64,000 nucleotides of DNA, from positions 1-64,000 of IMG/VR virus record IMGVR_UViG_3300009034_000001. The stretch is one strand, 5' to 3'. Of the stretch, positions 10,485 to 31,626 are shown in pieces. Each line of letters begins with the position of its first letter. Within the stretch, counting starts at the first letter, position 1. Position numbers and translations under genes: made by a program. The notes beneath the pieces are model-generated. The model saw only the letters and a list, made by a program, of their open reading frames with translations, did not search any database and was not told where the DNA came from.

Positions 10485-10970
10485 TCATTTTTGTTCTCCT
10501 TTAGAACAACTTTGTTCGATAATGCTAGTGGTGGAAGCTCCCTTTACATAATGTAAGCTTATAACCTCGCCGCCATGATTCTTAACAACGTCGGCTCCAA
10601 TAATGTTCTCCACTGACCAGTCGCCACCTTTCACCAGCACATGAGGTACAAGCGACTCAACCACTCTCAGGGGATCCAATTCATCAAAAATTACCACACT
10701 GTCAACACATTGAAGTGCAGCCAATACCTCTGCCCGCTCATCTTGAGGAACCAAGGGTCTTCCCTCGCCTTTTATGGCTCTTGCGGAGCTATCACTATTT
10801 ATGGCTACAATCAGATGATCACCACAGGTCTTAGCTTCTGCAAGATATCGAACATGGCCTACATGTAAAATATCAAAGCAGCCATTGGTAAGAACGACGT
10901 GCTTTCCCTCACCCTTGAGTTGGACAACTAAACGTTTCAACTCTTCTAAGCTTTTAATCTTCTTTCTCAT
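10485..10970 (-). CDS. rfaE2: D-glycero-beta-D-manno-heptose 1-phosphate adenylyltransferase (HldE C-terminal domain)
   Basis: TNGCFDILHVGH, NSDSS..KG.GRP, LVKGGDW, GASTT. Confidence 0.92.
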   Translation of the reverse strand: MRKKIKSLEELKRLVVQLKGEGKHVVLTNGCFDILHVGHVRYLAEAKTCGDHLIVAINSDSSARAIKGEGRPLVPQDERAEVLAALQCVDSVVIFDELDPLRVVESLVPHVLVKGGDWSVENIIGADVVKNHGGEVISLHYVKGASTTSIIEQSCSKGEQK

Positions 10971-16687: not shown

Positions 16688-16939
16688 TTAATCAATACAA
16701 ACAATACGACGACGTGATTCTTCAGCTTCCCTAACGCTTTCATTATGTTTATGATGTTCATACATCCGATTAGTATGATCTTTTTCTTCCTTAAGTAAGT
16801 GTTTAAGTGCGCTTATTCTCTGTTCAAGTTGTAAACATCGTTTATCTTTTTCTTCCTTAAGTAAGTGTTTAAGTTCTCTTATTCTCTGTTCAAGCTTTAA
16901 ACAACGTTTACAATTACTGTCTTTCATATCCATTACCAC
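16688..16939 (-). CDS. Coiled-coil protein with a 22-aa (66-bp) tandem duplication
   Basis: KRCLxLEQRIxxLKHLLKEEKD occurs twice. Confidence 0.7.
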   Translation of the reverse strand: MVMDMKDSNCKRCLKLEQRIRELKHLLKEEKDKRCLQLEQRISALKHLLKEEKDHTNRMYEHHKHNESVREAEESRRRIVCID

Positions 16940-18168
16940 CTTTCTAATAAGTAAGACTTTTCTTTCTCAAAGATTAAACATTCATCTTCAACAAACTCTT
17001 CCACCTGCTGAACTGACATACGACAAGTAGCATTAACGAAATGTAAGGTTTTTCCTAAGTACAACGGAATGAGCGAATTAGTAATATCTGTACGACTCAT
17101 TAAGTCTTTCTTGTAAGCAATGGCAAAATCAAACAATATTTTTGCCCACAAGGTTGTTGGGAAATTAAAACGCTTAAGAAGCCCCTTTATCTTTAATAAC
17201 TCATTATAATTGTTGGAATCAATCACCGTCGACCAAGTGTTCTCGAAATCGGCAAACCCTTGAACAAACTTCTTGAGTAAAATTTCCTTATCTACCTTCA
17301 CAACAGGGGGCCGTTCAATTTGGCCAAGTCCAAAACCAAAGATGGGCGTTGGCTTACTGGATTTAACCTGTTTCCAAACGTCCTCAAAGTGAGTCATTAA
17401 ATTAAAAAGCGTTCCTACCACCTCTTGGAACATAGCGCCTAAATGCAAGCCTGGATCCTTTGTATTATGAATCTTTGGTCTGCCTAAGAAAGTTTGACAA
17501 ACTTTTGCCCCTTTGTTAATAGCTAATGTGGTCATCCAAATATCAATTCCAAACTTTGAAACTCTTTCATTCCAACATCCCACCGAATGATCATCCAATC
17601 GGCACTCATTTACAAAGGCTTTAACAAGGTTCCCTGAGAAACCGAAGTCGCCAGCAATAGGTTGTCTGACTCTCATTCCATATAACATTCGAGTTAACGG
17701 ATAAGCAAGGTTATTTGTAATTGTGCCATCATACTTATGTCTAACATAAATTGGTATAACATAATCAAAACCGGAAAATAGTGGTCCACCTAAGTATTGT
17801 ATCCACCTGGGCATAATGCTCATTAGATCTGCATCAATCACAATTACAGCCTTAGCCTGTAACATATGTGCTTGAAAAAATAAGTTCTTCAGATTTATTC
17901 CTTTACCTTTAACCCCGGACTTTGTTGATAGATAAATCTTGGGGGTCTTTGTAGCTACTTTCAAGAACACGTCCTTAGTATTATCAAGCGAACAGTTATC
18001 ACAGTTAATAATAACAGCAGATTTGTCACCAAAGAATCTAACTAGGCCATCATCCACTCGTTTGGTTGGAAACCCTATTTTGTCAGCCTCATTAAATGAA
18101 GGTATGCCAACAACCAACTCAGCACATTCAATACCACTTGGATTTTCAATGTAATCCATATCATTCAT
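16933..18168 (-). CDS. GT-A glycosyltransferase, glucosylglycerate/mannosylglycerate synthase-like
   Basis: VVGIPSFNE, GKG, DAD, P.YVRHKYDGTITN, RQPIAGDF, FGIDIWMTT. Confidence 0.8.
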   Translation of the reverse strand: MNDMDYIENPSGIECAELVVGIPSFNEADKIGFPTKRVDDGLVRFFGDKSAVIINCDNCSLDNTKDVFLKVATKTPKIYLSTKSGVKGKGINLKNLFFQAHMLQAKAVIVIDADLMSIMPRWIQYLGGPLFSGFDYVIPIYVRHKYDGTITNNLAYPLTRMLYGMRVRQPIAGDFGFSGNLVKAFVNECRLDDHSVGCWNERVSKFGIDIWMTTLAINKGAKVCQTFLGRPKIHNTKDPGLHLGAMFQEVVGTLFNLMTHFEDVWKQVKSSKPTPIFGFGLGQIERPPVVKVDKEILLKKFVQGFADFENTWSTVIDSNNYNELLKIKGLLKRFNFPTTLWAKILFDFAIAYKKDLMSRTDITNSLIPLYLGKTLHFVNATCRMSVQQVEEFVEDECLIFEKEKSYLLERW

Positions 18169-18908: not shown

Positions 18909-19862
18909 TTAACCTACGGGTTTGAATCGTTGGTGCTCTAATGCTTCCTCTAATTCATTTTGAAACACAACAGACGTCATACCTTTCAATACCGCCAAAC
19001 TACCAGCCACAACTGCAATCTTAGTGGCATCACTTAAACTCTTTCCTGAGCCAATACTCAAAGCTAATGCAGCAACAACAACATCACCTGCGCCACAAAC
19101 GTTTGTAACCTCACTTGTAATAGATGGAAAATGTTTCGGATTGAAATTTGATTTCTCATGTAGATACAAACCATCCGCATTTGCCTTGACAATAACAGCA
19201 TCTAAACCCAACATTTCAATCAGAGCTTTCGGATTTGAAAACCCTTCAGAACAGGCAACAGTCAACTCTTTCCGATTCGGTGTCAACAAGTTAGCATTGG
19301 CATATTTGCTAAACTCAACTTTAGGGTCCACAATTACAAAATTGTTATTTCGTCTTGCACGCGTTGATGTATTAAAGCAGACATCTCTTGTGACTACGCC
19401 TTTGGCATAATCCGACACAACTACAATACCATCATTTATCATGTAATCCTCAACGCGTTGCAACATTTGTTCCTCTTCCGCTTCGGTCAGTACGCCGGGA
19501 CTCTCTTGATCAACACGGAGCAGTTGTTGCTGACGTGCTACAAATCTTAACTTACGGGTGGTCTTTCTGGTTGGACTGATAACACATCGGTCTACAATTT
19601 CACCATCATTTAGTAAACCTTTTAAAAGTTCTCCGTCGTCATCCGGACCCCTTAATCCAATCAGTTCAACTGACTCCGCACCAAGAGATATTAAATTTGC
19701 AGCAACATTTGCAGCTCCACCTAACATATAAAGTTGTGACTTTTCCCGGAAGACGGGCACCGGCGCTTCGGGAGAAATTCGATTCACTAATCCAAACGCC
19801 CAATGATCCAACATACAATCTCCAAGACACAACACTTTAATATTTTTCCTAAACAAACTCAT
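18909..19862 (-). CDS. rfaE1: D-glycero-D-manno-heptose 7-phosphate kinase (HldE N-terminal, PfkB family)
   Basis: GD.MLD, RISPEAPVPV, GGAANVA, QQLLRVD.E, SDYAKG, VDPK, TPN..E, GAGD. Confidence 0.92.
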   Translation of the reverse strand: MSLFRKNIKVLCLGDCMLDHWAFGLVNRISPEAPVPVFREKSQLYMLGGAANVAANLISLGAESVELIGLRGPDDDGELLKGLLNDGEIVDRCVISPTRKTTRKLRFVARQQQLLRVDQESPGVLTEAEEEQMLQRVEDYMINDGIVVVSDYAKGVVTRDVCFNTSTRARRNNNFVIVDPKVEFSKYANANLLTPNRKELTVACSEGFSNPKALIEMLGLDAVIVKANADGLYLHEKSNFNPKHFPSITSEVTNVCGAGDVVVAALALSIGSGKSLSDATKIAVVAGSLAVLKGMTSVVFQNELEEALEHQRFKPVG

Positions 19863-21165: not shown

Positions 21166-23454
21166 CTATGCTTCCATCAGTCTTGACAATTGATCAATCA
21201 ACATTTTAAGTGACGTCCTCAGAGGGTGTCCCTCTGGCAACATGTCAATTGTAACTTCGAAGTATTGTCTACTTAACCTTAAGTAATAAAAGCCCAGCTC
21301 TTTGGCGGGGGCGTAAAATTGAGACTCCAAGCCTAATGCTTTCTTTAATAACTTCTCCGCTTCCGGGTCAAGCGAATTTTGTTCAATTAAATGTACGGCC
21401 ATGGAAAACCAAGGACGTGGATCCTTGGGAGACTTTTCGGCCATTTTCTGATACATGGACCAATAGTGATCAAGTTTCTTCCCAACGTCCACCTTCGGCT
21501 TGAGATATCCAAAATGATCCACCACCGTTCTTGATCGATGCACATCCAAATTCAACTTATGCGCGCAGTAGTCAACTGTTTCATGAACGTGGCCAGTATA
21601 TTCCATCTTTTGTGGATTCCTCATGAGCCTAATTGTTTCCGAAAAGGATGGCTTACTTGCTTGAGGTATCCAATTGTGTACACTGAAACAGAAACAATCT
21701 ACGTGTGGATTATCCAATTGTCGATTCAATATTCTTAAATCGTGTATCCGTTCGTCGATATCAAGATGCTGAAACCATGGAGTTGAAACCTCCTTAAGAA
21801 TTTTATTACGACAAACGTCAAAGCCATCATCAATTGATCCAGTTAAAATCCTTACATTGTATAATTGTGCTAACTCGATGGAGCCATCTGTACTTCCCGT
21901 ATCTAACAGAATAACTTCGTCAAAGAAAGCAGACGCAATTTTTAAATATTCATCAAGGATGCCAACTTCATTTTTCATTACCGATCCAACAGTACATTGA
22001 GCATCTTCCGAGAAGTGTGAAATTTTAACATCTGTATCAATCAAGAACTTGTAATCTTTATCTCCCGCCAACATTGGATCAGGATTTGGATCGAGCTTTG
22101 TATAAAAGTCAAATTTCTTCCTCCTCATTTCCTCGGTCAAGTATCCAAAATGTTTAATTCTAATTGAACTTTGTGCATGATACTCAATAGGATAATAAGG
22201 CACATTTCCTACGTGTATCTTTGTATTCTTGTGACCTCGGTCCTTCCACCAATCAATTTTACATCCTTTATACACTTTACAAATACGAGGCATATCTGCA
22301 AAACCAAAGTGCTTATCGGTTCGATAGTTATTTTCATCATTCCACATTGTATAATACTGTAACCTTAAACAAAGCGTCTCCGGCGAAAGTTTCCTTAACA
22401 TCTGTTCAATATACATTCGGTCAACCTTATCCTCAGGAATTTCATCTGCATCTATCGACCATAACCAATTGCAACTATGCTGAATAGTAGCCAAATCAAC
22501 CAAATCCTGCCGTTGATCAAGTTCATCTTTCCTTTCCTTATCCTTATAGTAGATAATATTATCATATCTCCGGAGGACCAAGGTGATATCTAATGGAGAA
22601 TCATCATCCAAGATAAATATCCAATCTCCAATTTGTGACATCTTTTTAATCGATTTGTCAAACAACTTCAACTCATCTTGGTCTTCAATCCTGACGCGGT
22701 ACATAACACCTAATACTAAAGGTTCTTCTTTAACCTTCTGTCTCCAACGTTTTAAAAACGGAATTCTTGAACTACCACCAATCATATCCCACTGTGGTGG
22801 CAATGCCACACCGCGCCTAAACACATATCCATCGGAACATACGTAGGAATGGAAACCAGCAAGGTATAAACGTAAAATGAAATCCACATCCTCAACACCT
22901 TCATAAAGTTCTTCAACGAAACCGTTAACAGCATCAAAAGCTGACTTCTTAACAAACATACAAAAACTGGTTAAGTAACCCACTTCCCAAAAACGAGGAA
23001 AGCCCTTTGAATGTAGCTTGTCCTGAACCGATTGCACATTATCTGCAGTTGCACCTCTCAAATCAAGTCGTTGCTGACCAGGTACGTTGTTGCACAACGG
23101 TCCTATTGCTCCAACGGGAGCACGTAGCTGCAAACCGACGTCTTCAATAGCCATTTCCAATTGTTCAACAATGCCGCTAGGAAGTACAATATCATCAGCA
23201 AGAAACAAAATGTATTCGCCTTGTGCCTCTTTCGCACCGGCATTACAAGCTCCAGCCCTATTAAGGTTGGTTGCTTTTATAACCTTACCATCCGGAAGTG
23301 TGCTTACAAGTGTTTCAATAACCTTAACATTGTCAGGAGTACAATCAGCACAAACTACAATAACCTCCGCGGATGTAGACTTTAAACTCTCCAAACACTG
23401 AGTTAAGTGTGAAACGTTGTTACATGTTGGAACTACAATCGACGTTTGATTCAT
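21166..23454 (-). CDS. Multidomain glycosyltransferase (three GT2-like domains plus TPR-like C-terminus)
   Basis: SIVVPT...LADD...EDVDF; LDD.S...IDADE...HFGY; KNE...DTGSTDGS...LDIDE...VHE...HFGY; helical tail. Confidence 0.85.
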   Translation of the reverse strand: MNQTSIVVPTCNNVSHLTQCLESLKSTSAEVIVVCADCTPDNVKVIETLVSTLPDGKVIKATNLNRAGACNAGAKEAQGEYILFLADDIVLPSGIVEQLEMAIEDVGLQLRAPVGAIGPLCNNVPGQQRLDLRGATADNVQSVQDKLHSKGFPRFWEVGYLTSFCMFVKKSAFDAVNGFVEELYEGVEDVDFILRLYLAGFHSYVCSDGYVFRRGVALPPQWDMIGGSSRIPFLKRWRQKVKEEPLVLGVMYRVRIEDQDELKLFDKSIKKMSQIGDWIFILDDDSPLDITLVLRRYDNIIYYKDKERKDELDQRQDLVDLATIQHSCNWLWSIDADEIPEDKVDRMYIEQMLRKLSPETLCLRLQYYTMWNDENNYRTDKHFGFADMPRICKVYKGCKIDWWKDRGHKNTKIHVGNVPYYPIEYHAQSSIRIKHFGYLTEEMRRKKFDFYTKLDPNPDPMLAGDKDYKFLIDTDVKISHFSEDAQCTVGSVMKNEVGILDEYLKIASAFFDEVILLDTGSTDGSIELAQLYNVRILTGSIDDGFDVCRNKILKEVSTPWFQHLDIDERIHDLRILNRQLDNPHVDCFCFSVHNWIPQASKPSFSETIRLMRNPQKMEYTGHVHETVDYCAHKLNLDVHRSRTVVDHFGYLKPKVDVGKKLDHYWSMYQKMAEKSPKDPRPWFSMAVHLIEQNSLDPEAEKLLKKALGLESQFYAPAKELGFYYLRLSRQYFEVTIDMLPEGHPLRTSLKMLIDQLSRLMEA

Positions 23455-23466
23455 ATTACATCCCCC

Positions 23467-23709
23467 TTAGTCTTGATAGTCCGTAGGGTGTTCTATAACT
23501 TCCAACACCACACGTTTCTTGAAAATTTTCATGATTTGTTTTTCGGGATTTCTAGCCGCCCAACTGCCAAGAGTACTTAACGAGTCGAATACATAGTAAC
23601 ACTGTTCCGAACCTGAACACTTATAGTATACCAAGTACTCCCATGTACTCAGGGGCCAGAAAACAAACATCCAGCATAGAAGTAAAGAGATTAAAAGGTT
23701 CTTAATCAT
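23467..23709 (-). CDS. Small secreted or membrane protein
   Basis: N-terminal signal-like hydrophobic segment. Confidence 0.6.
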   Translation of the reverse strand: MIKNLLISLLLCWMFVFWPLSTWEYLVYYKCSGSEQCYYVFDSLSTLGSWAARNPEKQIMKIFKKRVVLEVIEHPTDYQD

Positions 23710-23723
23710 TTTTTCCTCCTTGT

Positions 23724-23966
23724 CTATAGGTTCTTTGCTTTTTTGATCACTTCGTAAAGTTCTTTTCTTGTGGAAATCATCTGTGGATGTTCTGCCAAGA
23801 CCAATTTAACCATCTTGCCAAACACATCGTAATGTGGAATTCTTTTTGCTTGAAACCACACTCGTTTCAAACCAACACGTTGTGCAAACGCATGTAACTC
23901 GTTTAAACTTTCATCAGATAAAAGGTGGATACCATCAAAATAAATTGACATATATTGTATTGTCAC
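23724..23966 (-). CDS. DUF4031 family protein
   Basis: HLLSD...ELHAFA..VGLKR.WFQ...PHYD. Confidence 0.8.
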   Translation of the reverse strand: MTIQYMSIYFDGIHLLSDESLNELHAFAQRVGLKRVWFQAKRIPHYDVFGKMVKLVLAEHPQMISTRKELYEVIKKAKNL

Positions 23967-24082
23967 TAACTTATTAGTAGTTTATACTTGGATTATGTAC
24001 CCTAAATTAGTACTGTAGTGGAATTTAAACTAGTTTTTTTAGTCTACCTTTATGGTAGAGTTAATTTTAACACTCTATAGCT

Positions 24083-24111
24083 AGTTTAAACTCTTCTGAT
24101 AAATTTGTCAA
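24083..24111 (-). promoter_or_regulatory. sigma70-type promoter
   Basis: TTGACA-N17-TAAACT on the minus strand in an intergenic gap. Confidence 0.7.
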
Positions 24112-24696
24112 TTACTTTTTACAACATAATTTGGAAAATGCCAATAACTTCCTTTTGTAAACGTAGCGTGTACCTCCATCGTGCCACAGCTGATAGTCTA
24201 ATTTGAAAGTTGGAGAACCAAATACCGAAACTGCGTATGAAAACTCAACATCATTCATATCTACTAAAAGAATTCCATCCATTTCCAAACGTTCTTCGAC
24301 CATCCCTTTCAAGAACGAATCGACAAACAAACCTTTTACCAATCCTAATATTAAGATCACATTGAATGTATAATGTTCAAAATTGCAATCTTCAATTCGG
24401 CCGACATTAATCCTTACTGAACTATCCAAAAGTGCTGAGTAACTACATATAAATTGTTTTGCCGCGGTTTTTGATACATCGTTGTACATATAAAGTTTGA
24501 CGTCAGATTTAATAAGTGGAAGTATTGCCCCGGTACCTCCGGCAACATCCAAAACACGTAAAGGCTTTTTACAAACCCTGTTAATGAAAAAGTGGCACAA
24601 GTTAAACTTAATAGTAACAAAATCTGTTTTCAAATAGTCATATGCACCTCCAGACCACATCCTCTCCTGTGCCTTTACGTCACGCCACATTTTCAT
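24112..24696 (-). CDS. Class I SAM-dependent methyltransferase
   Basis: VLDVAGGTG motif I; NDVS. Confidence 0.8.
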   Translation of the reverse strand: MKMWRDVKAQERMWSGGAYDYLKTDFVTIKFNLCHFFINRVCKKPLRVLDVAGGTGAILPLIKSDVKLYMYNDVSKTAAKQFICSYSALLDSSVRINVGRIEDCNFEHYTFNVILILGLVKGLFVDSFLKGMVEERLEMDGILLVDMNDVEFSYAVSVFGSPTFKLDYQLWHDGGTRYVYKRKLLAFSKLCCKK

Positions 24697-25376
24697 TTTA
24701 ATTTCCTTATAAGTGAGAAACCTGCTTTCCCCGGAAAACGTATTATATCATAACAATTTAAAGCCTTACGTAGTTGATGTACCAACCGCGGTTCGTGATA
24801 CTGATCATCTTGAGCTGTATCATGAACCAAGATGAAACCACCTGGTTTTACAAACTTACCAATTTTTTTAAAATCAAACTCCACATCATCTTTTTTATCA
24901 GAACCATCAATAAAAAGTAAATCAATTTCTGGCGGAGCTTTACACAGTTCACTTTTTTTAAAGAACTCCCGGTTTGTAAGTTTGTAATGTGTAATCCAAT
25001 TTGTATTTAAGCCAACAGACTCAAACCGCTCCTTAACCTTGTGAGGATCAGACCAACAATCACTGCGGTGATAAGATGGATCAACGAAGTGGACACGGCC
25101 AACGTTGTTGTCTCTTGCAGCTAAAGCTAAGCACATTGGAACAAATCCAAAGCCACTACCAATACAAACAATCACTCGTGGTTTGTAAATTCGTACGATT
25201 CCGTAATAAAAATAGCCGTATCCCAAATTGTCAGTGTCACATTCATAACCCGGCTTCTCCGTTTCGGTTAATTGATTATATCTATATTTAGGTACACCCG
25301 TCTGATGGCAAAACGGACCACCAATATCCAAAAGTTTTAAACACGCCTCTTTGTCAAACAATTTCATATTTATCAC
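24693..25376 (-). CDS. Class I SAM-dependent methyltransferase (Methyltransf_24-like)
   Basis: IGSGFG, IDLLFIDG, KPGG.ILVHD. Confidence 0.85.
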   Translation of the reverse strand: MINMKLFDKEACLKLLDIGGPFCHQTGVPKYRYNQLTETEKPGYECDTDNLGYGYFYYGIVRIYKPRVIVCIGSGFGFVPMCLALAARDNNVGRVHFVDPSYHRSDCWSDPHKVKERFESVGLNTNWITHYKLTNREFFKKSELCKAPPEIDLLFIDGSDKKDDVEFDFKKIGKFVKPGGFILVHDTAQDDQYHEPRLVHQLRKALNCYDIIRFPGKAGFSLIRKLK

Positions 25377-25382
25377 CTTGAC

Positions 25383-26306
25383 TTACACAGGTAAAATCTC
25401 CGACTTTTTCAAAATACGAACCTTTGTTTTCCTTCCCTTCTTCTTCTTTTTCTTTTTTACGCCATTTTCAAACGCAATCCCAACAACGGGTTTGGGTTCC
25501 TTCGATATTTTTTTAGCTGTTTCAACATAATCAACACAATTAACATAATCAGTATAGAAAGTTTCTGGAATCCTATCAACAGACCCCCAAATAGGGTACT
25601 TAATATGATAGTCCTTCCACTGATCTTTTTTCCACTTTAACATATTTGAGGCTAATTGTGCATGTTTGCTACGTGGCGTAGTTCGGGGATGCCACATGTG
25701 AAACAAATCACACTTCGAAATACATTGAAAAGGCCAGCCCCAAGCTCGTAGTTTTGACCAGAGTCCATTATCCTCGCCACCCCAACCTTCAAAGATTTCA
25801 GGAAAACCTTGAACCTCAACGAAAACCTGTCTTGGAACAACTATAACACCGCCAGCCGCACTACCCGGAGTAGGTATCTTAAATTTACTGGTCCTAGAAC
25901 AATTCTTTGTATCAAAGTAAATTTTATTCTCGCTTTGTGACCAGACATAAATCTGACTCCATCCCGCTTTTGGAACCGTTGTTTCGCGAACCTTTGATAT
26001 ATAGTTTGTTGGAAAAATCAAATCTGCATCTGCAAGTACCAACCATTCCCTATTGGCAAGAAGTTGAACAGCAACGTTAAAGGCCCATCCTCGGTTAAAT
26101 AAGCCCGTTGACTTTACAAACTTATATCTAAAGGTGGTACAACCTTGTGGAATTGGAACATTATGTAACTCACGTTTTGGACCAATTTCAAGCAAACAAA
26201 ATTGTGCCCAGTCATTACCTGTAAAATGTAAACTGTCAATTGATGCCTTCAACAAAGGTAACCGAGTTTCATGATGTTGATAAATCATTACGAATGACAT
26301 ATCCAT
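25383..26306 (-). CDS. GT2/GT7C-like glycosyltransferase
   Basis: FNRGW..N, DAD, GFPE.FEGWGGED, H.WHP; paralog of 30529..31239. Confidence 0.85.
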   Translation of the reverse strand: MDMSFVMIYQHHETRLPLLKASIDSLHFTGNDWAQFCLLEIGPKRELHNVPIPQGCTTFRYKFVKSTGLFNRGWAFNVAVQLLANREWLVLADADLIFPTNYISKVRETTVPKAGWSQIYVWSQSENKIYFDTKNCSRTSKFKIPTPGSAAGGVIVVPRQVFVEVQGFPEIFEGWGGEDNGLWSKLRAWGWPFQCISKCDLFHMWHPRTTPRSKHAQLASNMLKWKKDQWKDYHIKYPIWGSVDRIPETFYTDYVNCVDYVETAKKISKEPKPVVGIAFENGVKKKKKKKGRKTKVRILKKSEILPV

Positions 26307-26321
26307 AAAAAATCCACCTCC

Positions 26322-27416
26322 TTATAATTGGCGACCTTGTGATTCCTCAATGTTTAAATCTGAAATAGTACCTAAAAGATGATTAGTAAATTTGGTTATA
26401 AATGATACGTGGAAATCATGTTTAATTTCAAACATTGGATCTCTTCCGATGACTTTACAAATTTCGTTTAGAAACTGTTTTGCACGTACTTCCATTGAAT
26501 GATACTTATGGATAAATTCCATTCCATTTAATACAATTCGTTCACGCTCTTTATCATGTGCTAACCACCATTCAACCTGCTCGGCAATATTCCTAACATC
26601 AAGACAAACCATATTCTCCTGAGGATCAAATCCAAGTATTCTTAACTCCGGAAACCAATCACCAATTAATAACGTATTACACGCCGGAATCTCAAAGTAC
26701 TTTAAAACTGGATAATGTAATTTACTTCCGGTTGTGGTACAAATCTTCGAGGAACTTAACAATTTTGCATACTGTCTACCTCTATAACTATTTGATCCGC
26801 GTTTACTTGGGTCCTCAGAAGGTCTGTCAACTGTATAAAAGTACGATTTACCCTGGAGATATCTAATAATTTGTTGTCGCATGGGGTAGTAAACCGGACT
26901 AGCAACCCCTGTATGTAGAACCTCTATACTTTTCCCTAGGCCGTAATCTTTAAATACGTCCATGTCTACAGCGTGAGGCAACCAGAAACACTTATGTCCC
27001 TTGCAAATAGTAGGATGGAAGGTTTGTAATGGAAGTTTGTACCTATGGAACACAACATCAAAATTAAACTCCTTTATCATCTCCACCTGCCACTTGACAA
27101 TAGGCCCATGTAAATCCTCAAGTAGTACACCTTTTGGACATCTGATTTCATCCCAGCCGTCATTTATAAATCCAAAGAGGGCATCAGTAAACACAAAATC
27201 AAATTCCTCTTTCGAACTTCTCAAATACGACAGCATTGTTTGTTTACGCCTTATATTTCCAGACATTGCCTGCCGACTAAACTGGCCAGCTTCTAAACCT
27301 TCCGTGGACTGTCGAATACATATCACATCAGTCAACCTTGACGCAGCATTTTGGAAGGCATCAAAGTGTTGTGCAACACGTGAACTTCTATCAATCGTAA
27401 GCCAAAGAATCTTCAT
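26322..27416 (-). CDS. GT-B glycosyltransferase (CgeB/Glyco_trans_1_2-like)
   Basis: WLPHAVD, YP.R, YA.LL..SKI, KYFEIPAC.TLL, ERERI..NG. Confidence 0.85.
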   Translation of the reverse strand: MKILWLTIDRSSRVAQHFDAFQNAASRLTDVICIRQSTEGLEAGQFSRQAMSGNIRRKQTMLSYLRSSKEEFDFVFTDALFGFINDGWDEIRCPKGVLLEDLHGPIVKWQVEMIKEFNFDVVFHRYKLPLQTFHPTICKGHKCFWLPHAVDMDVFKDYGLGKSIEVLHTGVASPVYYPMRQQIIRYLQGKSYFYTVDRPSEDPSKRGSNSYRGRQYAKLLSSSKICTTTGSKLHYPVLKYFEIPACNTLLIGDWFPELRILGFDPQENMVCLDVRNIAEQVEWWLAHDKERERIVLNGMEFIHKYHSMEVRAKQFLNEICKVIGRDPMFEIKHDFHVSFITKFTNHLLGTISDLNIEESQGRQL

Positions 27417-27420
27417 TCAA

Positions 27421-27852
27421 CTACTTCCAACAATTACAAATTTTTGTATCCATATTGTTAAAGTTCCAGCCTCTTCTCATTCCCAACGTAAAGCCAAAAA
27501 ATAGTGGTAGATAAACATACCATATAGGATATGCCAAAAACGAAGACAAATTAACTAACGTCAAGCCAAGGGTGTACTCATAGCCCATGAAGTGTTCCCA
27601 CTTCCCATTTATTGTGTTCTTTGTAAGCGGGAACGGTAACCCAACTCCACACCAACGTTTAATATGATGTAATATACATCCTACACCCAGCAATAAAGAT
27701 GTTACAGACACAATTATCCTCCAAGCAGGGAAGTCAGCAACAAAAATGTTGGAAAATGTTGCTAGTATCATGCCAAGTAAAATAAAGCTTGCAGAAGTAA
27801 TCAACTTGGCCTTTGATGTTGATTCCAAATACTTTAATAAAGCTGATTTCAT
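27421..27852 (-). CDS. Multi-pass membrane protein
   Basis: About four hydrophobic segments; lies inside the GT island. Confidence 0.7.
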   Translation of the reverse strand: MKSALLKYLESTSKAKLITSASFILLGMILATFSNIFVADFPAWRIIVSVTSLLLGVGCILHHIKRWCGVGLPFPLTKNTINGKWEHFMGYEYTLGLTLVNLSSFLAYPIWYVYLPLFFGFTLGMRRGWNFNNMDTKICNCWK

Positions 27853-27861
27853 CTCTTCCTC

Positions 27862-28674
27862 CTAATTTGGTGGGAAACCCCACTTTTGTATAAAATAGTC
27901 ACGACTACGTTGAGTAATATTTCTGTTGTACCGCGTCTTCATATACTCAGGAGGGCCGCCGCCATCATTCCAAGCATTTAATTGTGGAATTGACAAAATT
28001 GCACTTTTCCAACGAGCCTCTTTCATTTGAAGACAAAAATCAAAATCGCCCCATCCAATATAGTAATTCTGGTCAAGTTCGCAGGTATCAAAAACTTCAC
28101 GCCTCGTCAACTTTGTGGCTGATCCCATCGTGACTACATAATCTAATGGCCCTTTAATTGATCTACTGACAAGTCTGCCGTTAAATAAATTACATGCCAT
28201 AGGTGTTGGAGTACAACTTAACGAAACAGCCCCGAGCTCCTTATGCTGTTCCAACAATGTTACTAACGCTTCCAAGCCTCCACGTGGTACAATCATATCA
28301 CTATCAAGTGTCCATACATACGGAGTATCAAACTTTGTCAACGCCCTTTCAACAATATCATGTCGTGGTTTACCGGTACCAAGATTACCCATTGTAAATT
28401 GAATGTCACAAACGTGAAATTTTTGACCTAGATCCACAATTCGATCTTTATATTTCTCATCTAGACATTCTCGGCCCTGAACTCGCAAACACAAATTTAT
28501 AGGAATTTCAACGGCGGAAAGCGTTTTACCCAACGTCCTTACAAGTTTTTCGGGCCTTAACCAGGATAACATTGCAATCGTTACAAAAGGTGTCTTTGTT
28601 GAAAGTACCCTATCAAGTACTTCAACGTTAAACCCATCCCACAAGCCAGACAAGTATTTCGTTAGCTCATCCAT
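27862..28674 (-). CDS. GT2 family glycosyltransferase
   Basis: LDSDM (DxD), D..Y.IGWGD.DFC. Confidence 0.8.
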   Translation of the reverse strand: MDELTKYLSGLWDGFNVEVLDRVLSTKTPFVTIAMLSWLRPEKLVRTLGKTLSAVEIPINLCLRVQGRECLDEKYKDRIVDLGQKFHVCDIQFTMGNLGTGKPRHDIVERALTKFDTPYVWTLDSDMIVPRGGLEALVTLLEQHKELGAVSLSCTPTPMACNLFNGRLVSRSIKGPLDYVVTMGSATKLTRREVFDTCELDQNYYIGWGDFDFCLQMKEARWKSAILSIPQLNAWNDGGGPPEYMKTRYNRNITQRSRDYFIQKWGFPPN

Positions 28675-29286
28675 CTACCGCTTCCTCCATATACCAAGTC
28701 TTTGAAACTCAAGCCGGTCATGACCTAACTCTCTTATTTGTTCCCAAGTTGAAGGAATACTAAAATTGGAAAAGTTGCGTACTATAAAGTGTCCTCGTTC
28801 AGAGCCGACGTACTCGTTATTGGAACGTAAAAATGACAACGCTATGCCTCTCGATGAGCCGTTAAACAACCAATAAAGAAACCTTTGGCACAATTCATCT
28901 TCCACAATGTGAAATATAACATCGAAGCAGAGAAACATGTCAAAACGTGTATTAATATCAGACTTCACAAGGTCTGAGATCTTCATACCTACAAAATTTA
29001 TATCGGGAAACTTTACCTTACACATAGAAATGATTTCCTCGGAGCCATCCAAACCCGAATAACTAAACTCCCGATCTTTAAACGTTTTACAAGAAGAAAT
29101 CACTGACAAGTCACCACAGCCTATGTCAAGTAGTGTTTTGAAACCAATTGTGTCCCACGCAATCCTCAGCGCGTTGCACTTTTGTTCAGCCCACTGACCG
29201 AAGGAACCCCAACCACAATGACCATCCCGCTTATATCTTTGAGTCCAATACCTCAAGGCTTCATTTTCATTTTTTATCTTTTGCAT
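28675..29286 (-). CDS. Class I SAM-dependent methyltransferase
   Basis: YW..RY...G.GS, LLDIGCGD, GLDGS, DVIFH. Confidence 0.85.
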   Translation of the reverse strand: MQKIKNENEALRYWTQRYKRDGHCGWGSFGQWAEQKCNALRIAWDTIGFKTLLDIGCGDLSVISSCKTFKDREFSYSGLDGSEEIISMCKVKFPDINFVGMKISDLVKSDINTRFDMFLCFDVIFHIVEDELCQRFLYWLFNGSSRGIALSFLRSNNEYVGSERGHFIVRNFSNFSIPSTWEQIRELGHDRLEFQRLGIWRKR

Positions 29287-30001
29287 ATGGGAACCTTGAA
29301 AACACTCGTTTGCACAACTTTGTTAAAATTGAATTTGGATATCGTAAAAGCCAGCTTTCATCAATATGTAACCGATGTGTCATATTTCCAAAATAATGGA
29401 TTGAAAAGGAGTTTGGGAACACGTCGCCATCGTTTAGCAAAATTGGAATACCCCTTGTCTTTAAATTTTGTGAATTTTGTCCGCAGGAAAAGGGATGAAA
29501 AACTTCCTTTGGATGTGTTAATCCCAATCCATATCTTTTACAGGCATTGGTAAAGACATTGACGTTGTTCCACCCTGGCTTCCAATTTGCAATACACTCT
29601 TTAAATATGAGGTGGCCCTTAGGGGCTTTAATTATGCCTATAGCAAACATTCCCTCCTCGTCTTCTGAGTCCCTTGAAATTATCCATTCCATATTAGGGA
29701 AAGCTTTTAAAGCAATTAGATCGGTATCACAATATAAACCGCCACACTCATACAAAAATGTAAACTGCCATAAGTCAGATAGTGTTCTAACATTACCACC
29801 ACGTTGCAAGAAGCTGTCATCAACTATTGTGTGTGCATCAACAATTTCAACACCCTCATTATCATCGATCCAATACTTACTTTCTGGCGTTTGACCAGAC
29901 AACCAAACCTTTACACCATGGCCCGCCACTAAGTGACTCAAGATTGAAAGGCGATTTAAAAATTGAAAATCATCTCCATGCCAGAAAAAGTTGACTATCA
30001 T
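29267..30001 (-). CDS. DxD-motif glycosyltransferase (GT32/Gly_transf_sug-like)
   Basis: FFW.G, LSD..., GGLYCDTD. Start placed at the ATGA overlap (30001) rather than 30055. Confidence 0.8.
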   Translation of the reverse strand: MIVNFFWHGDDFQFLNRLSILSHLVAGHGVKVWLSGQTPESKYWIDDNEGVEIVDAHTIVDDSFLQRGGNVRTLSDLWQFTFLYECGGLYCDTDLIALKAFPNMEWIISRDSEDEEGMFAIGIIKAPKGHLIFKECIANWKPGWNNVNVFTNACKRYGLGLTHPKEVFHPFSCGQNSQNLKTRGIPILLNDGDVFPNSFSIHYFGNMTHRLHIDESWLLRYPNSILTKLCKRVFSRFPYAKDKK

Positions 30002-30513
30002 ACTTCCTCCAAACATAACTGCTTCTTTGACTTCCTTATCAACGACAGACCGCATTGTGGACCGGGTAACGTTACTATTTCAAACATGACCCTGTACTTA
30101 GGATTCACCCTTATTTCCCAAGCAGCTTCCCAAGCGTTTGAACATCGATCATCCTGTAACATAAATTCGGACATAGGGCAGGTGTCGTGTATTGCAATTA
30201 ATCCACTACCCTCCCTAACAAACCTTGAAAAATTGTCAAAGTCCATCAAAACTTGTTCCTTCCGGTGATCCGCATCGATAAATAGGAAATCAATGGGATC
30301 CGACCAAACTTCGGCAAATTTATCAGTACTCATTTTGTACATTTCGACGTGAGGTAAGTCTACAATATTTGAATGCTTTATATCAACCGCAACCGCCCTT
30401 TCTACGAGAGGTGCAATTCGGTTGAAGGTCACGCCTCCAAGGATACCAAGCTCCACGTAGGTATGCGGTTTCTGAATCTTAACAAGTAATTCTAAGAAAG
30501 CGGTATATTCCAA
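29998..30513 (-). CDS. Class I SAM-dependent methyltransferase (Methyltransf_24-like)
   Basis: YVELG..GG, IDFLFIDADH, IAIHD. Confidence 0.85.
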   Translation of the reverse strand: MEYTAFLELLVKIQKPHTYVELGILGGVTFNRIAPLVERAVAVDIKHSNIVDLPHVEMYKMSTDKFAEVWSDPIDFLFIDADHRKEQVLMDFDNFSRFVREGSGLIAIHDTCPMSEFMLQDDRCSNAWEAAWEIRVNPKYRVMFEIVTLPGPQCGLSLIRKSKKQLCLEEV

Positions 30514-30528
30514 ATGTGACCTCCAATG

Positions 30529-31239
30529 TCACTTGGGCACGGAACCCCAATCCTTGATAAAATCCAACCAAATTGACTTTGGCCACGCCGACATCTTAAA
30601 TGCATCATATCTATTTGACGCTTTTGGCCCCGTTTCCGGATGCCAAAGGTGCCAAAGTTCGGAGTTTATAAATTTGAAAGGGTAACCGAACGACTGCAAC
30701 TTCCACCAGAAAAGGTTGTCTTCACCACCCCATCCTTCGAACATCTCTGGGAACCCTTTAATTTCATAATAAACTTCCCTTGGAATTATACTAACCCCGC
30801 CACATGCACTTCTAGGCATAGGCATCCAAGTGTAATCCCCGTTACCAAGTTGACCAGAAGTAAGATATTCTTCAGTTTCCTTCCTTGTTAAACAATGAAG
30901 TTTCCTCCAACCGATAACAGGATAATCAATCTGTTTGACCACTTCAAGCCAATCGCGTGGAAATATCAAATCGGCGTCAGATAGAATGAGTTGTGCGCCG
31001 TTAGACAATTGAGTAACGCCTACATTCATTAGCCAACCTCTATTAAACGCCCGAGTCGTCGGGATAAACAAATACTTAAATCGTTTAATGAAATCAAACT
31101 CAAAAATTGTTTGAGTTTCGCCAACTTCAACTATACATAACTCAAGCTCATCAAGTGGTAGTGTCTTCAACATTGCTATTAGTAGTGGTAGACGTTTTGG
31201 ATGATGTTGATATGGTACTACAAATGAATATTTTAGCAT
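30529..31239 (-). CDS. GT2/GT7C-like glycosyltransferase
   Basis: FNRGW.MN, DAD, GFPE.FEGWGGED, HLWHP. Confidence 0.85.
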   Translation of the reverse strand: MLKYSFVVPYQHHPKRLPLLIAMLKTLPLDELELCIVEVGETQTIFEFDFIKRFKYLFIPTTRAFNRGWLMNVGVTQLSNGAQLILSDADLIFPRDWLEVVKQIDYPVIGWRKLHCLTRKETEEYLTSGQLGNGDYTWMPMPRSACGGVSIIPREVYYEIKGFPEMFEGWGGEDNLFWWKLQSFGYPFKFINSELWHLWHPETGPKASNRYDAFKMSAWPKSIWLDFIKDWGSVPK

Positions 31240-31248
31240 AATACTGCC

Positions 31249-31626
31249 TTAATGTATAAGTTCTGTAATATATGCAACAGACTTGGAAAACGTTCCGTTG
31301 GTTGCAACACTAACCAAAAGTGAAACAACGCCCATTATAACGGCAATAACAATACCAACTTTCAACCGCTTTGAAATATCCTTCTTATCATTTATCCAAT
31401 CGCAAATGACTTTTTGTTTCGTTTCCAACCTTGCAATTGTTTCACCATGCTTTCCAACAATGTCATTACAATGATCAAACTTTTTGAATAACCGATGTTG
31501 AATTCGAGCGGTGTCCTTCGTGAAGGTAGTATAAGCCTTAAGATGTGCAACCAGCTTTTCTTCAAGCCTAGCAGCAATTATCTTTGTCTCCATAATTTCT
31601 TTAAGAATCTTTTCTGAATTATCCAT
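31249..31626 (-). CDS. Coiled-coil protein with C-terminal TM helix (holin/XhlA-like)
   Basis: IARLET coiled coil followed by one TM segment; located at the end of the tail module. Confidence 0.45.
   Translation of the reverse strand: MDNSEKILKEIMETKIIAARLEEKLVAHLKAYTTFTKDTARIQHRLFKKFDHCNDIVGKHGETIARLETKQKVICDWINDKKDISKRLKVGIVIAVIMGVVSLLVSVATNGTFSKSVAYITELIH

What the first reader, a model, noticed from the sequence alone, without database searches (positions are those of the whole stretch)
21166..31239. 10-kb glycosyltransferase/methyltransferase island directly after the tail module
Seen: six GT genes (about eight GT domains: GT2, two GT7C-like paralogs, GT32-like DxD, CgeB-like, triple GT2+TPR), four SAM methyltransferases largely alternating with them, and a membrane protein. 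Most abut or overlap and continue the tail operon. Established: some mycobacteriophages glycosylate capsid/tail proteins with GT plus glycan methyltransferase genes, and GT2-TPR enzymes are often protein glycosyltransferases. Inference: this builds a complex methylated glycan on the virion or the host surface.
Basis: partly seen in the sequence, partly recalled or inferred. Interest (0 to 1): 0.7.

Follow-up and report, generated by a model that had tools for sequence, protein, structure and literature searches.

The report
Phage glycan-building gene island
An uncultured 241-kb tailed phage carries, right after its tail genes, a 10-kb block of sugar-adding and methyl-adding enzymes; its anchor enzyme resembles known protein glycosyltransferases and sits inside the head-tail gene block of a whole group of related phages, so the block most likely sugar-coats the virus particle itself.

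Summary
Window 21166-31239 (minus strand) holds 13 tightly packed ORFs. Six are glycosyltransferase (GT) genes with eight GT domains, four are class I SAM methyltransferases (MTs), one is a small membrane protein, one is a DUF4031 protein and one is an 80-aa ORF. They start 9 bp after the last ORF of the tail module.

The window is the first 64 kb of a 241-kb IMG/VR siphophage-like virus with no cultured relative.

The new result concerns the 762-aa enzyme (three GT-A domains plus a TPR-like tail). Its third domain and tail are homologous to SunS/ThuS and GmaR, which glycosylate peptides and flagellin. This module lies between the capsid and tail-tube genes in almost every sufficiently long relative of this phage's capsid clade, and it diverges in step with the capsid protein.

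The other GT and MT genes are a variable add-on. A six-gene orthologous cassette occurs on another phage contig, and a 103-kb relative has an analogous 12-kb island between its capsid and tail-tube genes.

The genome lacks lipid-carrier priming enzymes, a Wzx flippase and DNA-hypermodification precursor enzymes. It does encode nucleotide-sugar enzymes, including an ADP-heptose pathway.

Best reading: virion-protein glycosylation (about 0.55). This is a new variant of a known kind.

The parts
30529..31239 (-). GT-A glycosyltransferase with a beta4GalT-type 7C motif (7C_a). It is the first gene of the island.
   Evidence: PF02709, 38.7 bits. phrog_1721 galactosyl transferase. 40% identical to 25383-26306. 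Homologs of 35-37% lie next to the MCP in L045-L047 and in the L104 cassette.
29998..30513 (-). Class I SAM methyltransferase (Methyltransf_24).
   Evidence: PF13578, 42.3 bits.
29267..30055 (-). GT32-like DXD glycosyltransferase.
   Evidence: PF04488, 29.2 bits. 45% ortholog in L104.
28675..29286 (-). Class I SAM methyltransferase (Methyltransf_25).
   Evidence: PF13649, 27.6 bits. phrog_3382. 37% ortholog in L104.
27862..28674 (-). GT2-fold glycosyltransferase.
   Evidence: Pfam is below threshold at 18.9 bits. Atlas features 0.98 and TM 0.75-0.83 to GT2 clusters, many of them viral. 40% ortholog in L104.
27421..27852 (-). Small membrane protein (3-4 hydrophobic segments), function unknown.
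   Evidence: Hydropathy. No Pfam hit, so no GtrA match. There is only a weak structural lead to the PEMT/ICMT/DUF1295 membrane methyltransferase folds, from a model with pLDDT 0.51.
26322..27416 (-). CgeB-like glycosyltransferase with a GT-B (GT4-like) fold.
   Evidence: PF13524, 51.9 bits. AF2 pLDDT 86.8. Foldseek finds GT4-type enzymes; the top hit is the methylmannose-polysaccharide mannosyltransferase 7QSG. The best homologs (40-53%) are on metagenome contigs; the three contexts inspected look phage-like.
25383..26306 (-). Second 7C-type GT-A glycosyltransferase (7C_b), with a lysine-rich C-terminal tail.
   Evidence: PF02709, 39.7 bits. Paralog of 30529-31239. The tail is seen in the translation.
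24693..25376 (-). Class I SAM methyltransferase (Methyltransf_24).
   Evidence: PF13578, 57 bits.
24112..24696 (-). Class I SAM methyltransferase.
   Evidence: Pfam is below threshold at 18.6 bits. Atlas 0.97 and TM about 0.8 to class I methyltransferases.
23724..23966 (-). DUF4031 protein (80 aa), role unknown.
   Evidence: PF13223, 51.5 bits. phrog_4887.
23467..23709 (-). 80-aa ORF with a hydrophobic N-terminus and three Cys residues. It ends 12 bp upstream of the 762-aa GT.
   Evidence: Translation and hydropathy. No family hit.
22720..23454 (-). 762-aa GT, domain 1: generic GT2 (GT-A) with a DxD motif (D87-D88).
   Evidence: PF00535. PDB sequence matches to chondroitin synthase, SpsA and GalT1. 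D88, E188 and D189 are invariant in 19 homologs.
22045..22713 (-). 762-aa GT, domain 2: divergent GT-A with a D-x-D-E motif (335-338).
   Evidence: AF2 model. Invariant D335, D337, E338, H414, H435.
21169..22002 (-). 762-aa GT, domain 3 plus TPR-like helical tail: a SunS/ThuS/GmaR-like protein or peptide glycosyltransferase module. This is the conserved core of the system.
   Evidence: SunS 7MSP E 8e-11 and GmaR E 3.6e-8. Profile against GmaR, E 2.8e-40. TIGR04195, 58 bits. Foldseek SunS/ThuS, TMt 0.5-0.6. It is the only part conserved across all capsid-clade groups.
57073..58044 (-). Major capsid protein (MCP). It is the clade marker and a candidate acceptor.
   Evidence: phrog_25898. 33-50% identity to 73 IMG/VR loci. 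Weak complex support with GT residues 480-762.
51247..51858 (-). Putative tail-tube protein (MTP). It marks the downstream limit of the conserved GT position in relatives and is a candidate acceptor.
   Evidence: 29-50% homologs sit just upstream of the chaperone and TMP genes in relatives.
16933..18168 (-). Further GT2 / mannosylglycerate-synthase-like glycosyltransferase, outside the stated island.
   Evidence: PF21969 28.2 bits, PF00535 24.8 bits.
18909..19862 (-). D-glycero-beta-D-manno-heptose-7-phosphate kinase (HldE domain I type).
   Evidence: TIGR02198, E 1.8e-81, 273.7 bits, below the curated cut-off of 345.
10485..10970 (-). Heptose-1-phosphate adenylyltransferase (HldE domain II type).
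   Evidence: TIGR02199, 188.5 bits, above the cut-off of 181.5.

Best explanation
The island is a late-expressed, cytoplasmic, phage-encoded glycosylation system that decorates virion proteins with a complex and probably O-methylated glycan.

Proposed order of events:
1. The genes are transcribed with the tail genes. This is inferred from the shared strand, the 9-bp junction and the absence of a convincing terminator.
2. Sugar donors are host UDP-sugars plus phage-made ones. The genes are shown; their use is inferred. They include a UDP-sulfoquinovose-synthase-like enzyme, an NDP-sugar dehydrogenase, SDR epimerases/dehydratases and an ADP-heptose pathway.
3. The third GT-A domain and TPR-like tail of the 762-aa enzyme recognise a structural protein and attach the first sugar. 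The capsid protein is the leading candidate and the tail tube is the second. This step is inferred from homology to GmaR, SunS and ThuS.
4. Domains 1 and 2 of that enzyme and the five single-domain GTs extend the chain (inferred).
5. The four SAM methyltransferases cap or methylate the sugars. This is inferred from their interleaving with the GTs and from a GT-MT pair that stays adjacent in an orthologous cassette.

The priming module is old and inherited with the head-tail genes. The extension and methylation genes are a variable, exchangeable cassette, as expected for an exposed glycan under diversifying selection.
For: 1. Residues 482-713 of the 762-aa GT align to SunS (E 8e-11) and GmaR. 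A profile of 19 homologs hits GmaR at E 2.8e-40 and TPR proteins over positions 664-735. Foldseek gives SunS/ThuS at TMt 0.5-0.6. GmaR glycosylates flagellin (PMC9638930).
2. Full-length homologs (25-36% identity) sit between head-completion and tail genes of 35-43-kb phages, where they are the only GT, or one of two.
3. In an MCP-anchored scan of IMG/VR, 24 of 34 loci with at least 7 kb downstream of the MCP carry the module within 10 kb. Five more carry it 12-15 kb downstream. The remaining five are incomplete or truncated records.
4. A 137-kb complete relative has the order protease, MCP, connector, GT, tail tube.
5. Only the SunS-like part is conserved in all groups.
6. MCP and GT-domain pairwise identities correlate: Mantel r 0.95, 0 of 5000 permutations as high.
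7. A 103-kb complete relative has a 12-kb island of the same families between its MCP and tail tube: GT2, MT, GT32-like, SDR, CgeB-like, MT, UDPG-DH, SDR, 2-epimerase and the 810-aa GT.
8. The 241-kb genome has no Bac_transf, no Glycos_transf_4 and no Wzx. No island GT has a membrane segment.
9. There is no thymidylate-synthase-family gene and no Tet_JBP gene.
10. Complex prediction of MCP with GT residues 480-762 gave 'weak support'. The ipSAE score was 0.32 and the best control 0.00. The runs agree in at least 82% of contacts, and the partner's pLDDT is at least 79. The mark was reached by 58 of 80 solved complexes and 2 of 110 mismatched pairs. At 0.60 or under, however, only 7 of those 80 solved complexes passed, as did both mismatches. 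Such a pass is weak.
Against: - No experiment or proteome exists. The acceptor, the glycan and the methylation are all inferred.
- The MCP and the putative tail tube have no Ser/Thr-rich C-terminal extension like the glycosylated mycobacteriophage proteins.
- The orthologous six-gene cassette on contig L104/L115 lies among replication-type genes (RecA, sigma factor, metallophosphatase), not structural genes. Position therefore argues for the virion only in the case of the 762-aa enzyme.
- The genome encodes an ADP-heptose pathway and two GT9 heptosyltransferase-like proteins, which classically act on the LPS core.
- The island contains a membrane protein.
- GT2-TPR proteins also occur in bacterial polysaccharide loci.
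- The Mantel correlation would arise for any pair of linked genes that are not exchanged.
- The complex score is in the range where passes are more often wrong than right.
Confidence: 0.55

Rival explanations
1. Host-envelope remodelling. The enzymes modify the infected cell's LPS core, another surface glycan or a surface protein such as a pilin, flagellin or S-layer protein. This would block superinfection or stop progeny from re-adsorbing to debris.
For: The genome has a heptose-7-P kinase, a heptose-1-P adenylyltransferase, GmhA and two GT9 heptosyltransferase-like genes, with best matches to LPS heptosyltransferases II and III. The island includes a membrane protein. GmaR, the closest solved relative of the conserved module, acts on a host surface protein, flagellin. 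GT clusters of large cyanophages are usually read this way (PMC12801897).
Against: No priming phosphoglycosyltransferase, no WecA/MraY-type enzyme and no Wzx was found. The 143-aa membrane protein has no GtrA match. The conserved GT sits in the late head-tail operon, even in 40-kb phages, which is poor timing for surface remodelling. It co-diverges with the capsid protein.
Confidence: 0.22
2. Split function. The 762-aa enzyme glycosylates a virion protein. The accessory cassette (7C GTs, GT2, GT32-like, CgeB-like, MTs) builds a separate product on another acceptor.
For: The cassette travels without a nearby 762-aa homolog or structural genes on L104/L115. Small relatives have the 762-aa enzyme alone.
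Against: In both the window phage and the 103-kb relative, the accessory families are contiguous with the conserved enzyme in one co-oriented block.
Confidence: 0.12
3. Glycocin-like peptide or small-molecule glycosylation. The SunS-like module glycosylates a small secreted peptide or a metabolite.
For: SunS and ThuS are glycocin S-glycosyltransferases, and SunS is prophage-encoded. An 80-aa Cys-containing ORF with a hydrophobic N-terminus ends 12 bp upstream of the enzyme. Domain 1 weakly matches the MftF family.
Against: The TIGR04195 score of 58 is far below its cut-off of 350. The Pfam scans of the island ORFs and their immediate flanks found no peptide-export ABC transporter or thiol-disulfide gene. 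The 80-aa ORF has no homolog in the related loci. The conserved position is between capsid and tail genes.
Confidence: 0.04
4. DNA hypermodification. The GTs glycosylate hydroxymethylated bases of the phage genome.
For: Phage GT-A and GT-B enzymes do build glycans on DNA (bioRxiv 10.1101/2023.12.21.572611). PHROGs label the two MT24 proteins weakly as 'DNA methyltransferase'.
Against: The genome has no thymidylate-synthase/hydroxymethylase family member and no Tet_JBP dioxygenase. The closest solved relatives of the conserved module act on proteins and peptides.
Confidence: 0.03

Closest known systems
Mycobacteriophage virion glycosylation (Che8, Corndog, Myrna; Freeman et al. 2023, as cited in PMC12363180 and PMC12619734)
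   Same: Phage-encoded GTs are proposed to glycosylate the capsid and tail-tube subunits of a siphophage in the cytoplasm.
   Different: There is no detectable sequence homology. A tblastn search of the 762-aa GT against 50,697 phage records, a collection of GenBank phage genomes, gave only partial hits, to unnamed faecal 'Bacteriophage sp.' and 'Listeria phage' contigs. The MCP and tail tube have no Ser/Thr-rich C-termini. The priming enzyme here is a SunS/GmaR-type GT-A plus TPR, fused to two more GT-A domains. The gene sits between capsid and tail-tube genes across a clade. The gene set is far larger and includes nucleotide-sugar synthesis.
GmaR (Listeria flagellin O-GlcNAc transferase) and the SunS/ThuS glycocin S-glycosyltransferases
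   Same: A GT2 catalytic domain is followed by TPR-like helical repeats. The conserved R-N, D-x-D-E, H-E and H-x-G-Y/F positions align. These enzymes take protein or peptide acceptors.
   Different: The match is not at equivalog level (58 bits against a cut-off of 350). There is no antirepressor domain and no glycocin operon. The module is fused behind two extra GT-A domains and is encoded in a phage morphogenesis operon.
Chlorovirus capsid glycosylation (PBCV-1 A064R and others; PMC5408694)
   Same: A virus-encoded, soluble, multi-domain GT works together with methyltransferase activity, and virus-encoded sugar-nucleotide enzymes build a methylated glycan on the major capsid protein.
   Different: That is a eukaryotic giant virus with different GT families. 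Here the MTs are separate genes. The resemblance is analogy only.
GT-rich regions of large aquatic phages (cyanomyovirus S-SCSM2R with 13 GTs, PMC12801897; 'moraphages', PMC12619734)
   Same: Large aquatic phages carry many GTs and sugar epimerases of unknown target.
   Different: Those phages are contractile-tailed. Their GTs are interpreted as cell-wall or DNA modifiers, and no structural-operon-embedded protein-GT module is described.
Tandem GT-A polymerases (K4CP chondroitin polymerase, heparosan synthase PmHS2)
   Same: They are the top Foldseek matches for the multi-GT-A architecture.
   Different: Identity is low (13-15%), the RMSD is large and they have two domains rather than three. 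There is no evidence for polymerase activity here.

Membership tests
GT2 / GT-A glycosyltransferases | Pfam PF00535 score above the gathering threshold. | tested here: met
   762-aa protein: 92.5 bits against 23.3. 27862-28674 scores only 18.9 bits and is supported by fold and features instead.
GT2 / GT-A glycosyltransferases | GT-A fold with an acidic DxD-type metal/nucleotide motif. | tested here: met
   The AF2 model shows three GT-A domains. D88, D335/D337/E338 and D565/D567/E568 are invariant in 19 homologs.
SunS/GmaR-type protein or peptide glycosyltransferases (GT2 + TPR) | Homologous catalytic domain followed by TPR-like helical repeats. | tested here: met
   SunS E 8e-11 and GmaR profile E 2.8e-40. 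Helices at 654-761 match TPR chains. Foldseek TMt 0.5-0.6.
SunS/GmaR-type protein or peptide glycosyltransferases (GT2 + TPR) | Equivalog-level score (TIGR04195 cut-off of 350 bits). | tested here: not met
   58 bits. The protein is related to SunS but is not a SunS ortholog.
SunS/GmaR-type protein or peptide glycosyltransferases (GT2 + TPR) | A protein or peptide acceptor. | not testable with these tools
   There is only a weak complex prediction with the MCP: 0.32 against a best control of 0.00.
Mycobacteriophage-type virion glycosylation | Sequence homology to the phage GTs of that system. | tested here: not met
   tblastn of the 762-aa GT against the phage genome collection returned only partial hits, to unnamed faecal and Listeria phage contigs. 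The other island GTs were not searched this way.
Mycobacteriophage-type virion glycosylation | Glycans on the C-termini of capsid and tail-tube subunits. | not testable with these tools
   No Ser/Thr-rich C-terminal tails were seen. Mass spectrometry is needed.
Wzx/Wzy or ABC-type surface polysaccharide locus | Priming phosphoglycosyltransferase (Bac_transf, or the WecA/MraY type). | tested here: not met
   No match in the 241-kb genome; the control genomes were positive.
Wzx/Wzy or ABC-type surface polysaccharide locus | Flippase (Polysacc_synt / Wzx). | tested here: not met
   No match. Wzy and ABC exporters were not searched.
Seroconversion GtrABC | A GtrA-family small flippase and a membrane-anchored GtrB. 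| tested here: not met
   The 143-aa membrane protein has no Pfam hit. No island GT has a membrane segment.
Phage DNA glycosylation pathways | An enzyme that makes hydroxymethylpyrimidine (ThyA-family hydroxymethylase or 5mYOX/TET). | tested here: not met
   No PF00303 and no PF12851 match in the genome.
CgeB-like GT (PF13524) | Pfam score above the gathering threshold, and a GT-B fold. | tested here: met
   51.9 bits against 25. The AF2 model matches GT4-type GT-B enzymes at TM about 0.6.
ADP-heptose pathway (neighbouring genes, not the island) | GmhA, a heptose-7-P kinase, a heptose-1-P adenylyltransferase, the GmhB phosphatase and the HldD epimerase. | tested here: inconclusive
   The adenylyltransferase is above its cut-off (188.5 against 181.5). 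The kinase (273.7 against 345) and GmhA (166.9 against 209) are strong but below cut-off. GmhB was not searched. The SDR proteins match HldD only weakly.

The most novel reading that the evidence does not exclude
A whole, so far uncultured clade of siphophage-like viruses (about 35 to 241 kb) carries a protein-glycosylation module as a core component of its head-tail operon. In the largest members it has grown into a virus-autonomous glycosylation system. That system would run from nucleotide-sugar synthesis (ADP-heptose, a UDP-sulfoquinovose-like sugar, uronic or deoxy sugars), through priming and extension, to O-methylation. This would be the bacteriophage counterpart of giant-virus capsid glycosylation.
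Probability: 0.35. Interest if true: 0.8.

Novelty: new variant of a known kind. Interest (0 to 1): 0.62.

Why it matters
Virion glycosylation in phages has so far been shown only in a few mycobacteriophages.

If this reading holds, glycosylated virions are an inherited trait of a widespread environmental phage clade. The system would combine a conserved priming enzyme with an exchangeable sugar and methyl toolkit.

That would bear on how phage particles resist proteases, grazing and non-specific adsorption, and on how they recognise hosts. It would give annotators a marker: a SunS/GmaR-like GT-TPR gene between the capsid and tail-tube genes. It would also offer a compact three-domain protein glycosyltransferase for glycoengineering.

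The claim is directly testable by co-expressing two genes.

Tried and rejected
- **Near-DNA search.** A megablast search of the island against 50,697 phage records found nothing.
- **Single-protein IMG/VR scans.** These returned only a near-identical 173-kb contig of the same virus.
- **Alignment too diverse.** The 19-sequence alignment could not be used for pattern scanning. A 7-sequence subset worked.
- **Scan of prokaryote genomes.** A pattern scan of 185,579 prokaryote species genomes for the 762-aa enzyme found no relative. The method is pattern-based, so absence is not proven.
- **Cultured relatives.** tblastn of the MCP, the tail hub and the GT against the collection of GenBank phage genomes gave only remote or partial hits. 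No cultured model is available.
- **'Moraphage' lineage.** The jumbo-phage lineage of PMC12619734 was considered and set aside. Those phages have contractile tails and no identified tape measure protein.
- **Promoter and terminator scans.** Results were at chance level and say nothing about operon structure.
- **Sequencing runs.** Only DNA runs from sediment metagenomes hold 10-13% of the sampled words. No RNA run was shown to hold it, although the search (kind 'any') did not look for RNA specifically.
- **Acceptor motifs.** No Ser/Thr-rich tails were found on structural proteins.
- **Orthology with the 103-kb relative.** The window's CgeB-like and GT32-like genes show no direct orthology to those of the relative. 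The likeness is at family level only.
- **Cellular synteny.** Cellular CgeB-like loci (Paenibacillus, Fictibacillus, Sutcliffiella, Desulfobacterales, Nitrospirota) share no synteny with the island.
- **RNA genes.** No tRNA or Rfam family was found in the window.
- **Literature.** The Freeman et al. 2023 paper is not held in the library, so it is cited only through papers that cite it.
- **Host.** The host could not be determined.

Full report
**What the window is**

The window is the first 64 kb of a 241,415-bp IMG/VR virus record, estimated 98% complete by CheckV. All long ORFs are on the minus strand.

Window 31249-63904 is a siphophage-type morphogenesis module:
- prohead protease, 58100-59797
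- major capsid protein (MCP), 57073-58044
- a 2150-aa tape measure protein, 41745-48197
- tail assembly protein, 36430-37257
- tail hub, 33610-36003

No tRNA or Rfam family is present. Cultured phages give no near-DNA match and only remote protein matches. IMG/VR holds one near-identical 173-kb contig of the same virus.

**The observation**

The stated coordinates coincide with 13 minus-strand ORFs.

Eight Pfam assignments pass their gathering scores: two Glyco_transf_7C, Gly_transf_sug, Glyco_trans_1_2, Glycos_transf_2 in the 762-aa protein, two Methyltransf_24 and one Methyltransf_25. Two further assignments fall below threshold: GT2 at 27862-28674 and MT25 at 24112-24696. Language-model features and predicted structure support both.

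The two 7C-type GTs are paralogs at 40% identity. The CgeB-like protein models as a GT-B/GT4-type enzyme. The 762-aa protein models with high confidence (pLDDT 88.8) as three GT-A domains plus a helical tail.

The count is therefore six GT genes with eight GT domains, four MTs and one membrane protein.

Inside the island, gaps run from -58 to +15 bp, except one gap of 145 bp. The junction to the preceding ORF is 9 bp. GC content (about 0.35-0.43) does not differ from the rest of the window. Promoter and terminator scans are at chance level.

**The anchor enzyme**

Domain 1 of the 762-aa protein is a generic GT2.

Residues 482-713 align to the glycocin S-glycosyltransferase SunS (E 8e-11) and to GmaR (E 3.6e-8). 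A profile of 19 full-length homologs hits GmaR at E 2.8e-40 and hits TPR proteins over the tail. NCBIfam gives the SunS family at 58 bits, far below the equivalog cut-off. Foldseek ranks SunS and ThuS, along with tandem GT-A polymerases, at the top.

GmaR transfers GlcNAc to flagellin, and its TPR domain is proposed to recognise that protein (PMC9638930).

The acidic and histidine motifs of all three domains are invariant in the 19 homologs. All three domains therefore look catalytically competent.

**Where the enzyme occurs**

Full-length homologs (25-36% identity, 95-100% coverage) come from metagenomes. On contigs of 35-43 kb they lie between head-completion genes and tail genes. There they are the only GT, or one of two.

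Those phages also share other proteins with the window phage:
- the MCP, 38-43% identity
- the protease, about 40%
- head-completion proteins
- a tail-tube-like protein, 42%

An MCP-anchored scan of IMG/VR gave 73 loci. Of the 34 loci with at least 7 kb downstream of the MCP:
- 24 have the GT within 10 kb
- 5 more have it 12-15 kb downstream
- the remaining 5 are incomplete or truncated records (four from records 15-25% complete)

Only the SunS/GmaR-like part (residues 488-760) is conserved across all groups. The N-terminal domains vary with the MCP group.

A complete 137-kb relative shows the order protease, MCP, head-tail connector, GT, tail tube, tape measure protein.

Pairwise identities of the MCP and the GT domain correlate strongly: Mantel r 0.95, with 0 of 5000 permutations reaching it. 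This shows the GT has not been exchanged independently of the capsid gene. It is what any stably linked pair would show.

A pattern scan of one genome from each of 185,579 prokaryote species found no relative.

**The accessory genes**

The small relatives lack the window's other GTs and MTs. Larger relatives carry 0-3 genes with GT2 matches and at most weak MT24 hits.

Two cases show that the accessory set recurs.

First, a complete 103-kb relative has 12 kb between its MCP and its tail tube encoding the following, in order:
- a two-domain GT2
- an MT
- a GT32-like GT
- an SDR
- a CgeB-like GT
- an unknown protein
- an MT
- a UDP-sugar dehydrogenase
- an SDR
- a UDP-GlcNAc 2-epimerase
- the 810-aa homolog of the anchor enzyme

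These are the same families as in the window, but they are not detectable orthologs.

Second, a 36.7-kb phage-like contig (L104/L115) carries true orthologs of six window genes in one cassette:
- UDP-sulfoquinovose-synthase-like, 44%
- 7C GT, 33-35%
- GT2, 40%
- MT25, 37%
- CgeB-like, 47%
- GT32-like, 45%

There the cassette lies among RecA, a sigma factor, a metallophosphatase and a phage metallopeptidase, not among structural genes.

Other close CgeB-like homologs sit in similar GT/MT/epimerase cassettes on phage-like contigs. Cellular CgeB-like loci are more distant (27-34%) and share no island synteny.

**The rest of the genome**

Sugar genes flank the structural module on both sides.

Downstream of the island lie:
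- a GT2, 16933-18168
- a heptose-7-P kinase, 18909-19862
- a heptose-1-P adenylyltransferase, 10485-10970

Upstream of the module, at genome 64.5-81.5 kb, lie:
- a UDP-sulfoquinovose-synthase-like enzyme (E 1e-167)
- a 281-aa NDP-sugar dehydrogenase
- MT24 and MT11 methyltransferases
- a GT2
- an SDR dehydratase/epimerase
- two GT9 heptosyltransferase-like proteins

GmhA lies at about 113 kb and another SDR at about 156 kb.

Absent from the genome are NTP_transferase, Bac_transf, Glycos_transf_4, Wzx, the thymidylate-synthase family and Tet_JBP. The control genomes were positive where the family is expected.

**Interpretation**

Four lines of evidence point to virion proteins as the acceptor:
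- the priming-type module resembles enzymes that glycosylate proteins and peptides
- it sits inside the late head-tail operon across a clade
- all the island GTs are soluble, and no lipid-carrier or export machinery was found
- the precursor enzymes for DNA hypermodification are absent

A complex prediction of the MCP with residues 480-762 of the enzyme gave 'weak support'. The ipSAE score was 0.32 and the best control 0.00. The runs agree in at least 82% of contacts, and the partner's pLDDT is at least 79. The mark was reached by 58 of 80 solved complexes and 2 of 110 mismatched pairs. At 0.60 or under, only 7 of those 80 passed, as did both mismatches that passed. This is a small increment, not proof.

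Several points count against the reading:
- there is no Ser/Thr-rich acceptor tail on the MCP or tail tube
- heptose and GT9 genes are typical of LPS work
- the accessory cassette can live outside structural regions
- there are no experimental data at all

I put virion glycosylation at about 0.55, host-envelope modification at about 0.22 and a split function at about 0.12. Glycocin-like peptide or small-molecule glycosylation and DNA glycosylation together come to less than 0.1.

**Comparison and novelty**

Mycobacteriophage virion glycosylation is the closest known kind. Here, however, the enzymes are unrelated in sequence, the priming enzyme is of the SunS/GmaR type, and the gene is a clade-wide part of the morphogenesis operon.

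The combination of multi-domain GTs, methyltransferases and virus-made sugar nucleotides parallels chlorovirus capsid glycosylation by analogy only (PMC5408694).

GT-rich regions are known in large aquatic phages, but their targets are unknown.

I rate this a new variant of a known kind, with moderate to high interest. It gives a simple, testable marker and a two-gene experiment.

Noticed in passing
window 10485-10970 and 18909-19862; genome G000 113.2-114.0 kb (L034:1285-2052); L031:11339-12373 and L031:16520-17551: The phage encodes most of an ADP-heptose pathway: a GmhA-like isomerase, an HldE-domain-I-type kinase and an HldE-domain-II-type adenylyltransferase. It also has two GT9 heptosyltransferase-like proteins. 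These genes are scattered rather than clustered. GmhB was not looked for.
   Followed up: partly
genome G000 64567-65751 (L031:567-1751), just beyond the window end: A 394-aa protein matches UDP-sulfoquinovose synthase almost at equivalog level (NF041015, E 1e-167, 557.8 bits against a cut-off of 575). A 44% ortholog heads the glycan cassette on contig L104. Epimerase/GDP_Man_Dehyd-family genes of 390-394 aa (not compared with it directly) sit in two other phage-like cassettes. The glycan may therefore contain a sulfo-sugar.
   Followed up: partly
window 61565-63904 and genome G000 72418-74373 (L031:8418-10373): Two large paralogs (51% identity) are built from a dozen or more tandem repeats of about 45-50 aa. 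The repeat has a recurring 'LAGCG.Q.AGLSFGG ... TEEY.G..W' pattern. By my own reading, untested, this looks Kelch/beta-propeller-like. Neither protein has a Pfam hit, and only the first was scanned against PHROGs (phrog_27227, unknown function). They bracket the start of the structural module and the second sugar island.
   Followed up: partly
window 25383-26306, C-terminal about 30 residues: The second 7C-type GT ends in a lysine-rich tail that includes a run of six lysines. Its paralog at 30529-31239 lacks this tail. It may be a membrane, nucleic-acid or capsid-association tag.
   Followed up: no
window 31249-31626: A 125-aa ORF lies between the last tail-like gene (a DUF2341 protein, 31642-32625) and the island. 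It has a helical N-terminal part and one strong C-terminal membrane segment, and no family hit. It could be a lysis or assembly factor.
   Followed up: no
window 7331-8515, 6583-7317, 9320-10081, 2-1498, 19877-20506; L031:15201-16523: Other auxiliary genes are present: an MttB-family (trimethylamine methyltransferase-like) protein, a class I glutamine amidotransferase, a methionine-aminopeptidase-type M24 peptidase, an NAD-dependent DNA ligase, RNase HII and a GluRS/GlnRS catalytic-domain protein.
   Followed up: no
window 51247-51858, residues about 30-50: The putative tail-tube protein carries an insertion of about 21 residues, rich in Pro, Ser and Gly, that the homologs in L008 and L020 lack. 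It is a possible surface loop, and speculatively a modification site.
   Followed up: no
L040:15895-16980: In the 137-kb relative, a LAGLIDADG homing endonuclease gene is inserted between the head-tail genes and the tail-tube gene.
   Followed up: no
G007 (IMGVR_UViG_3300034019_000950) 28128-28589: One 79-kb relative of the clade encodes a Tet_JBP dioxygenase (89 bits), far from its structural-operon GT. DNA hydroxymethylation therefore exists in the clade but not in the window phage.
   Followed up: no
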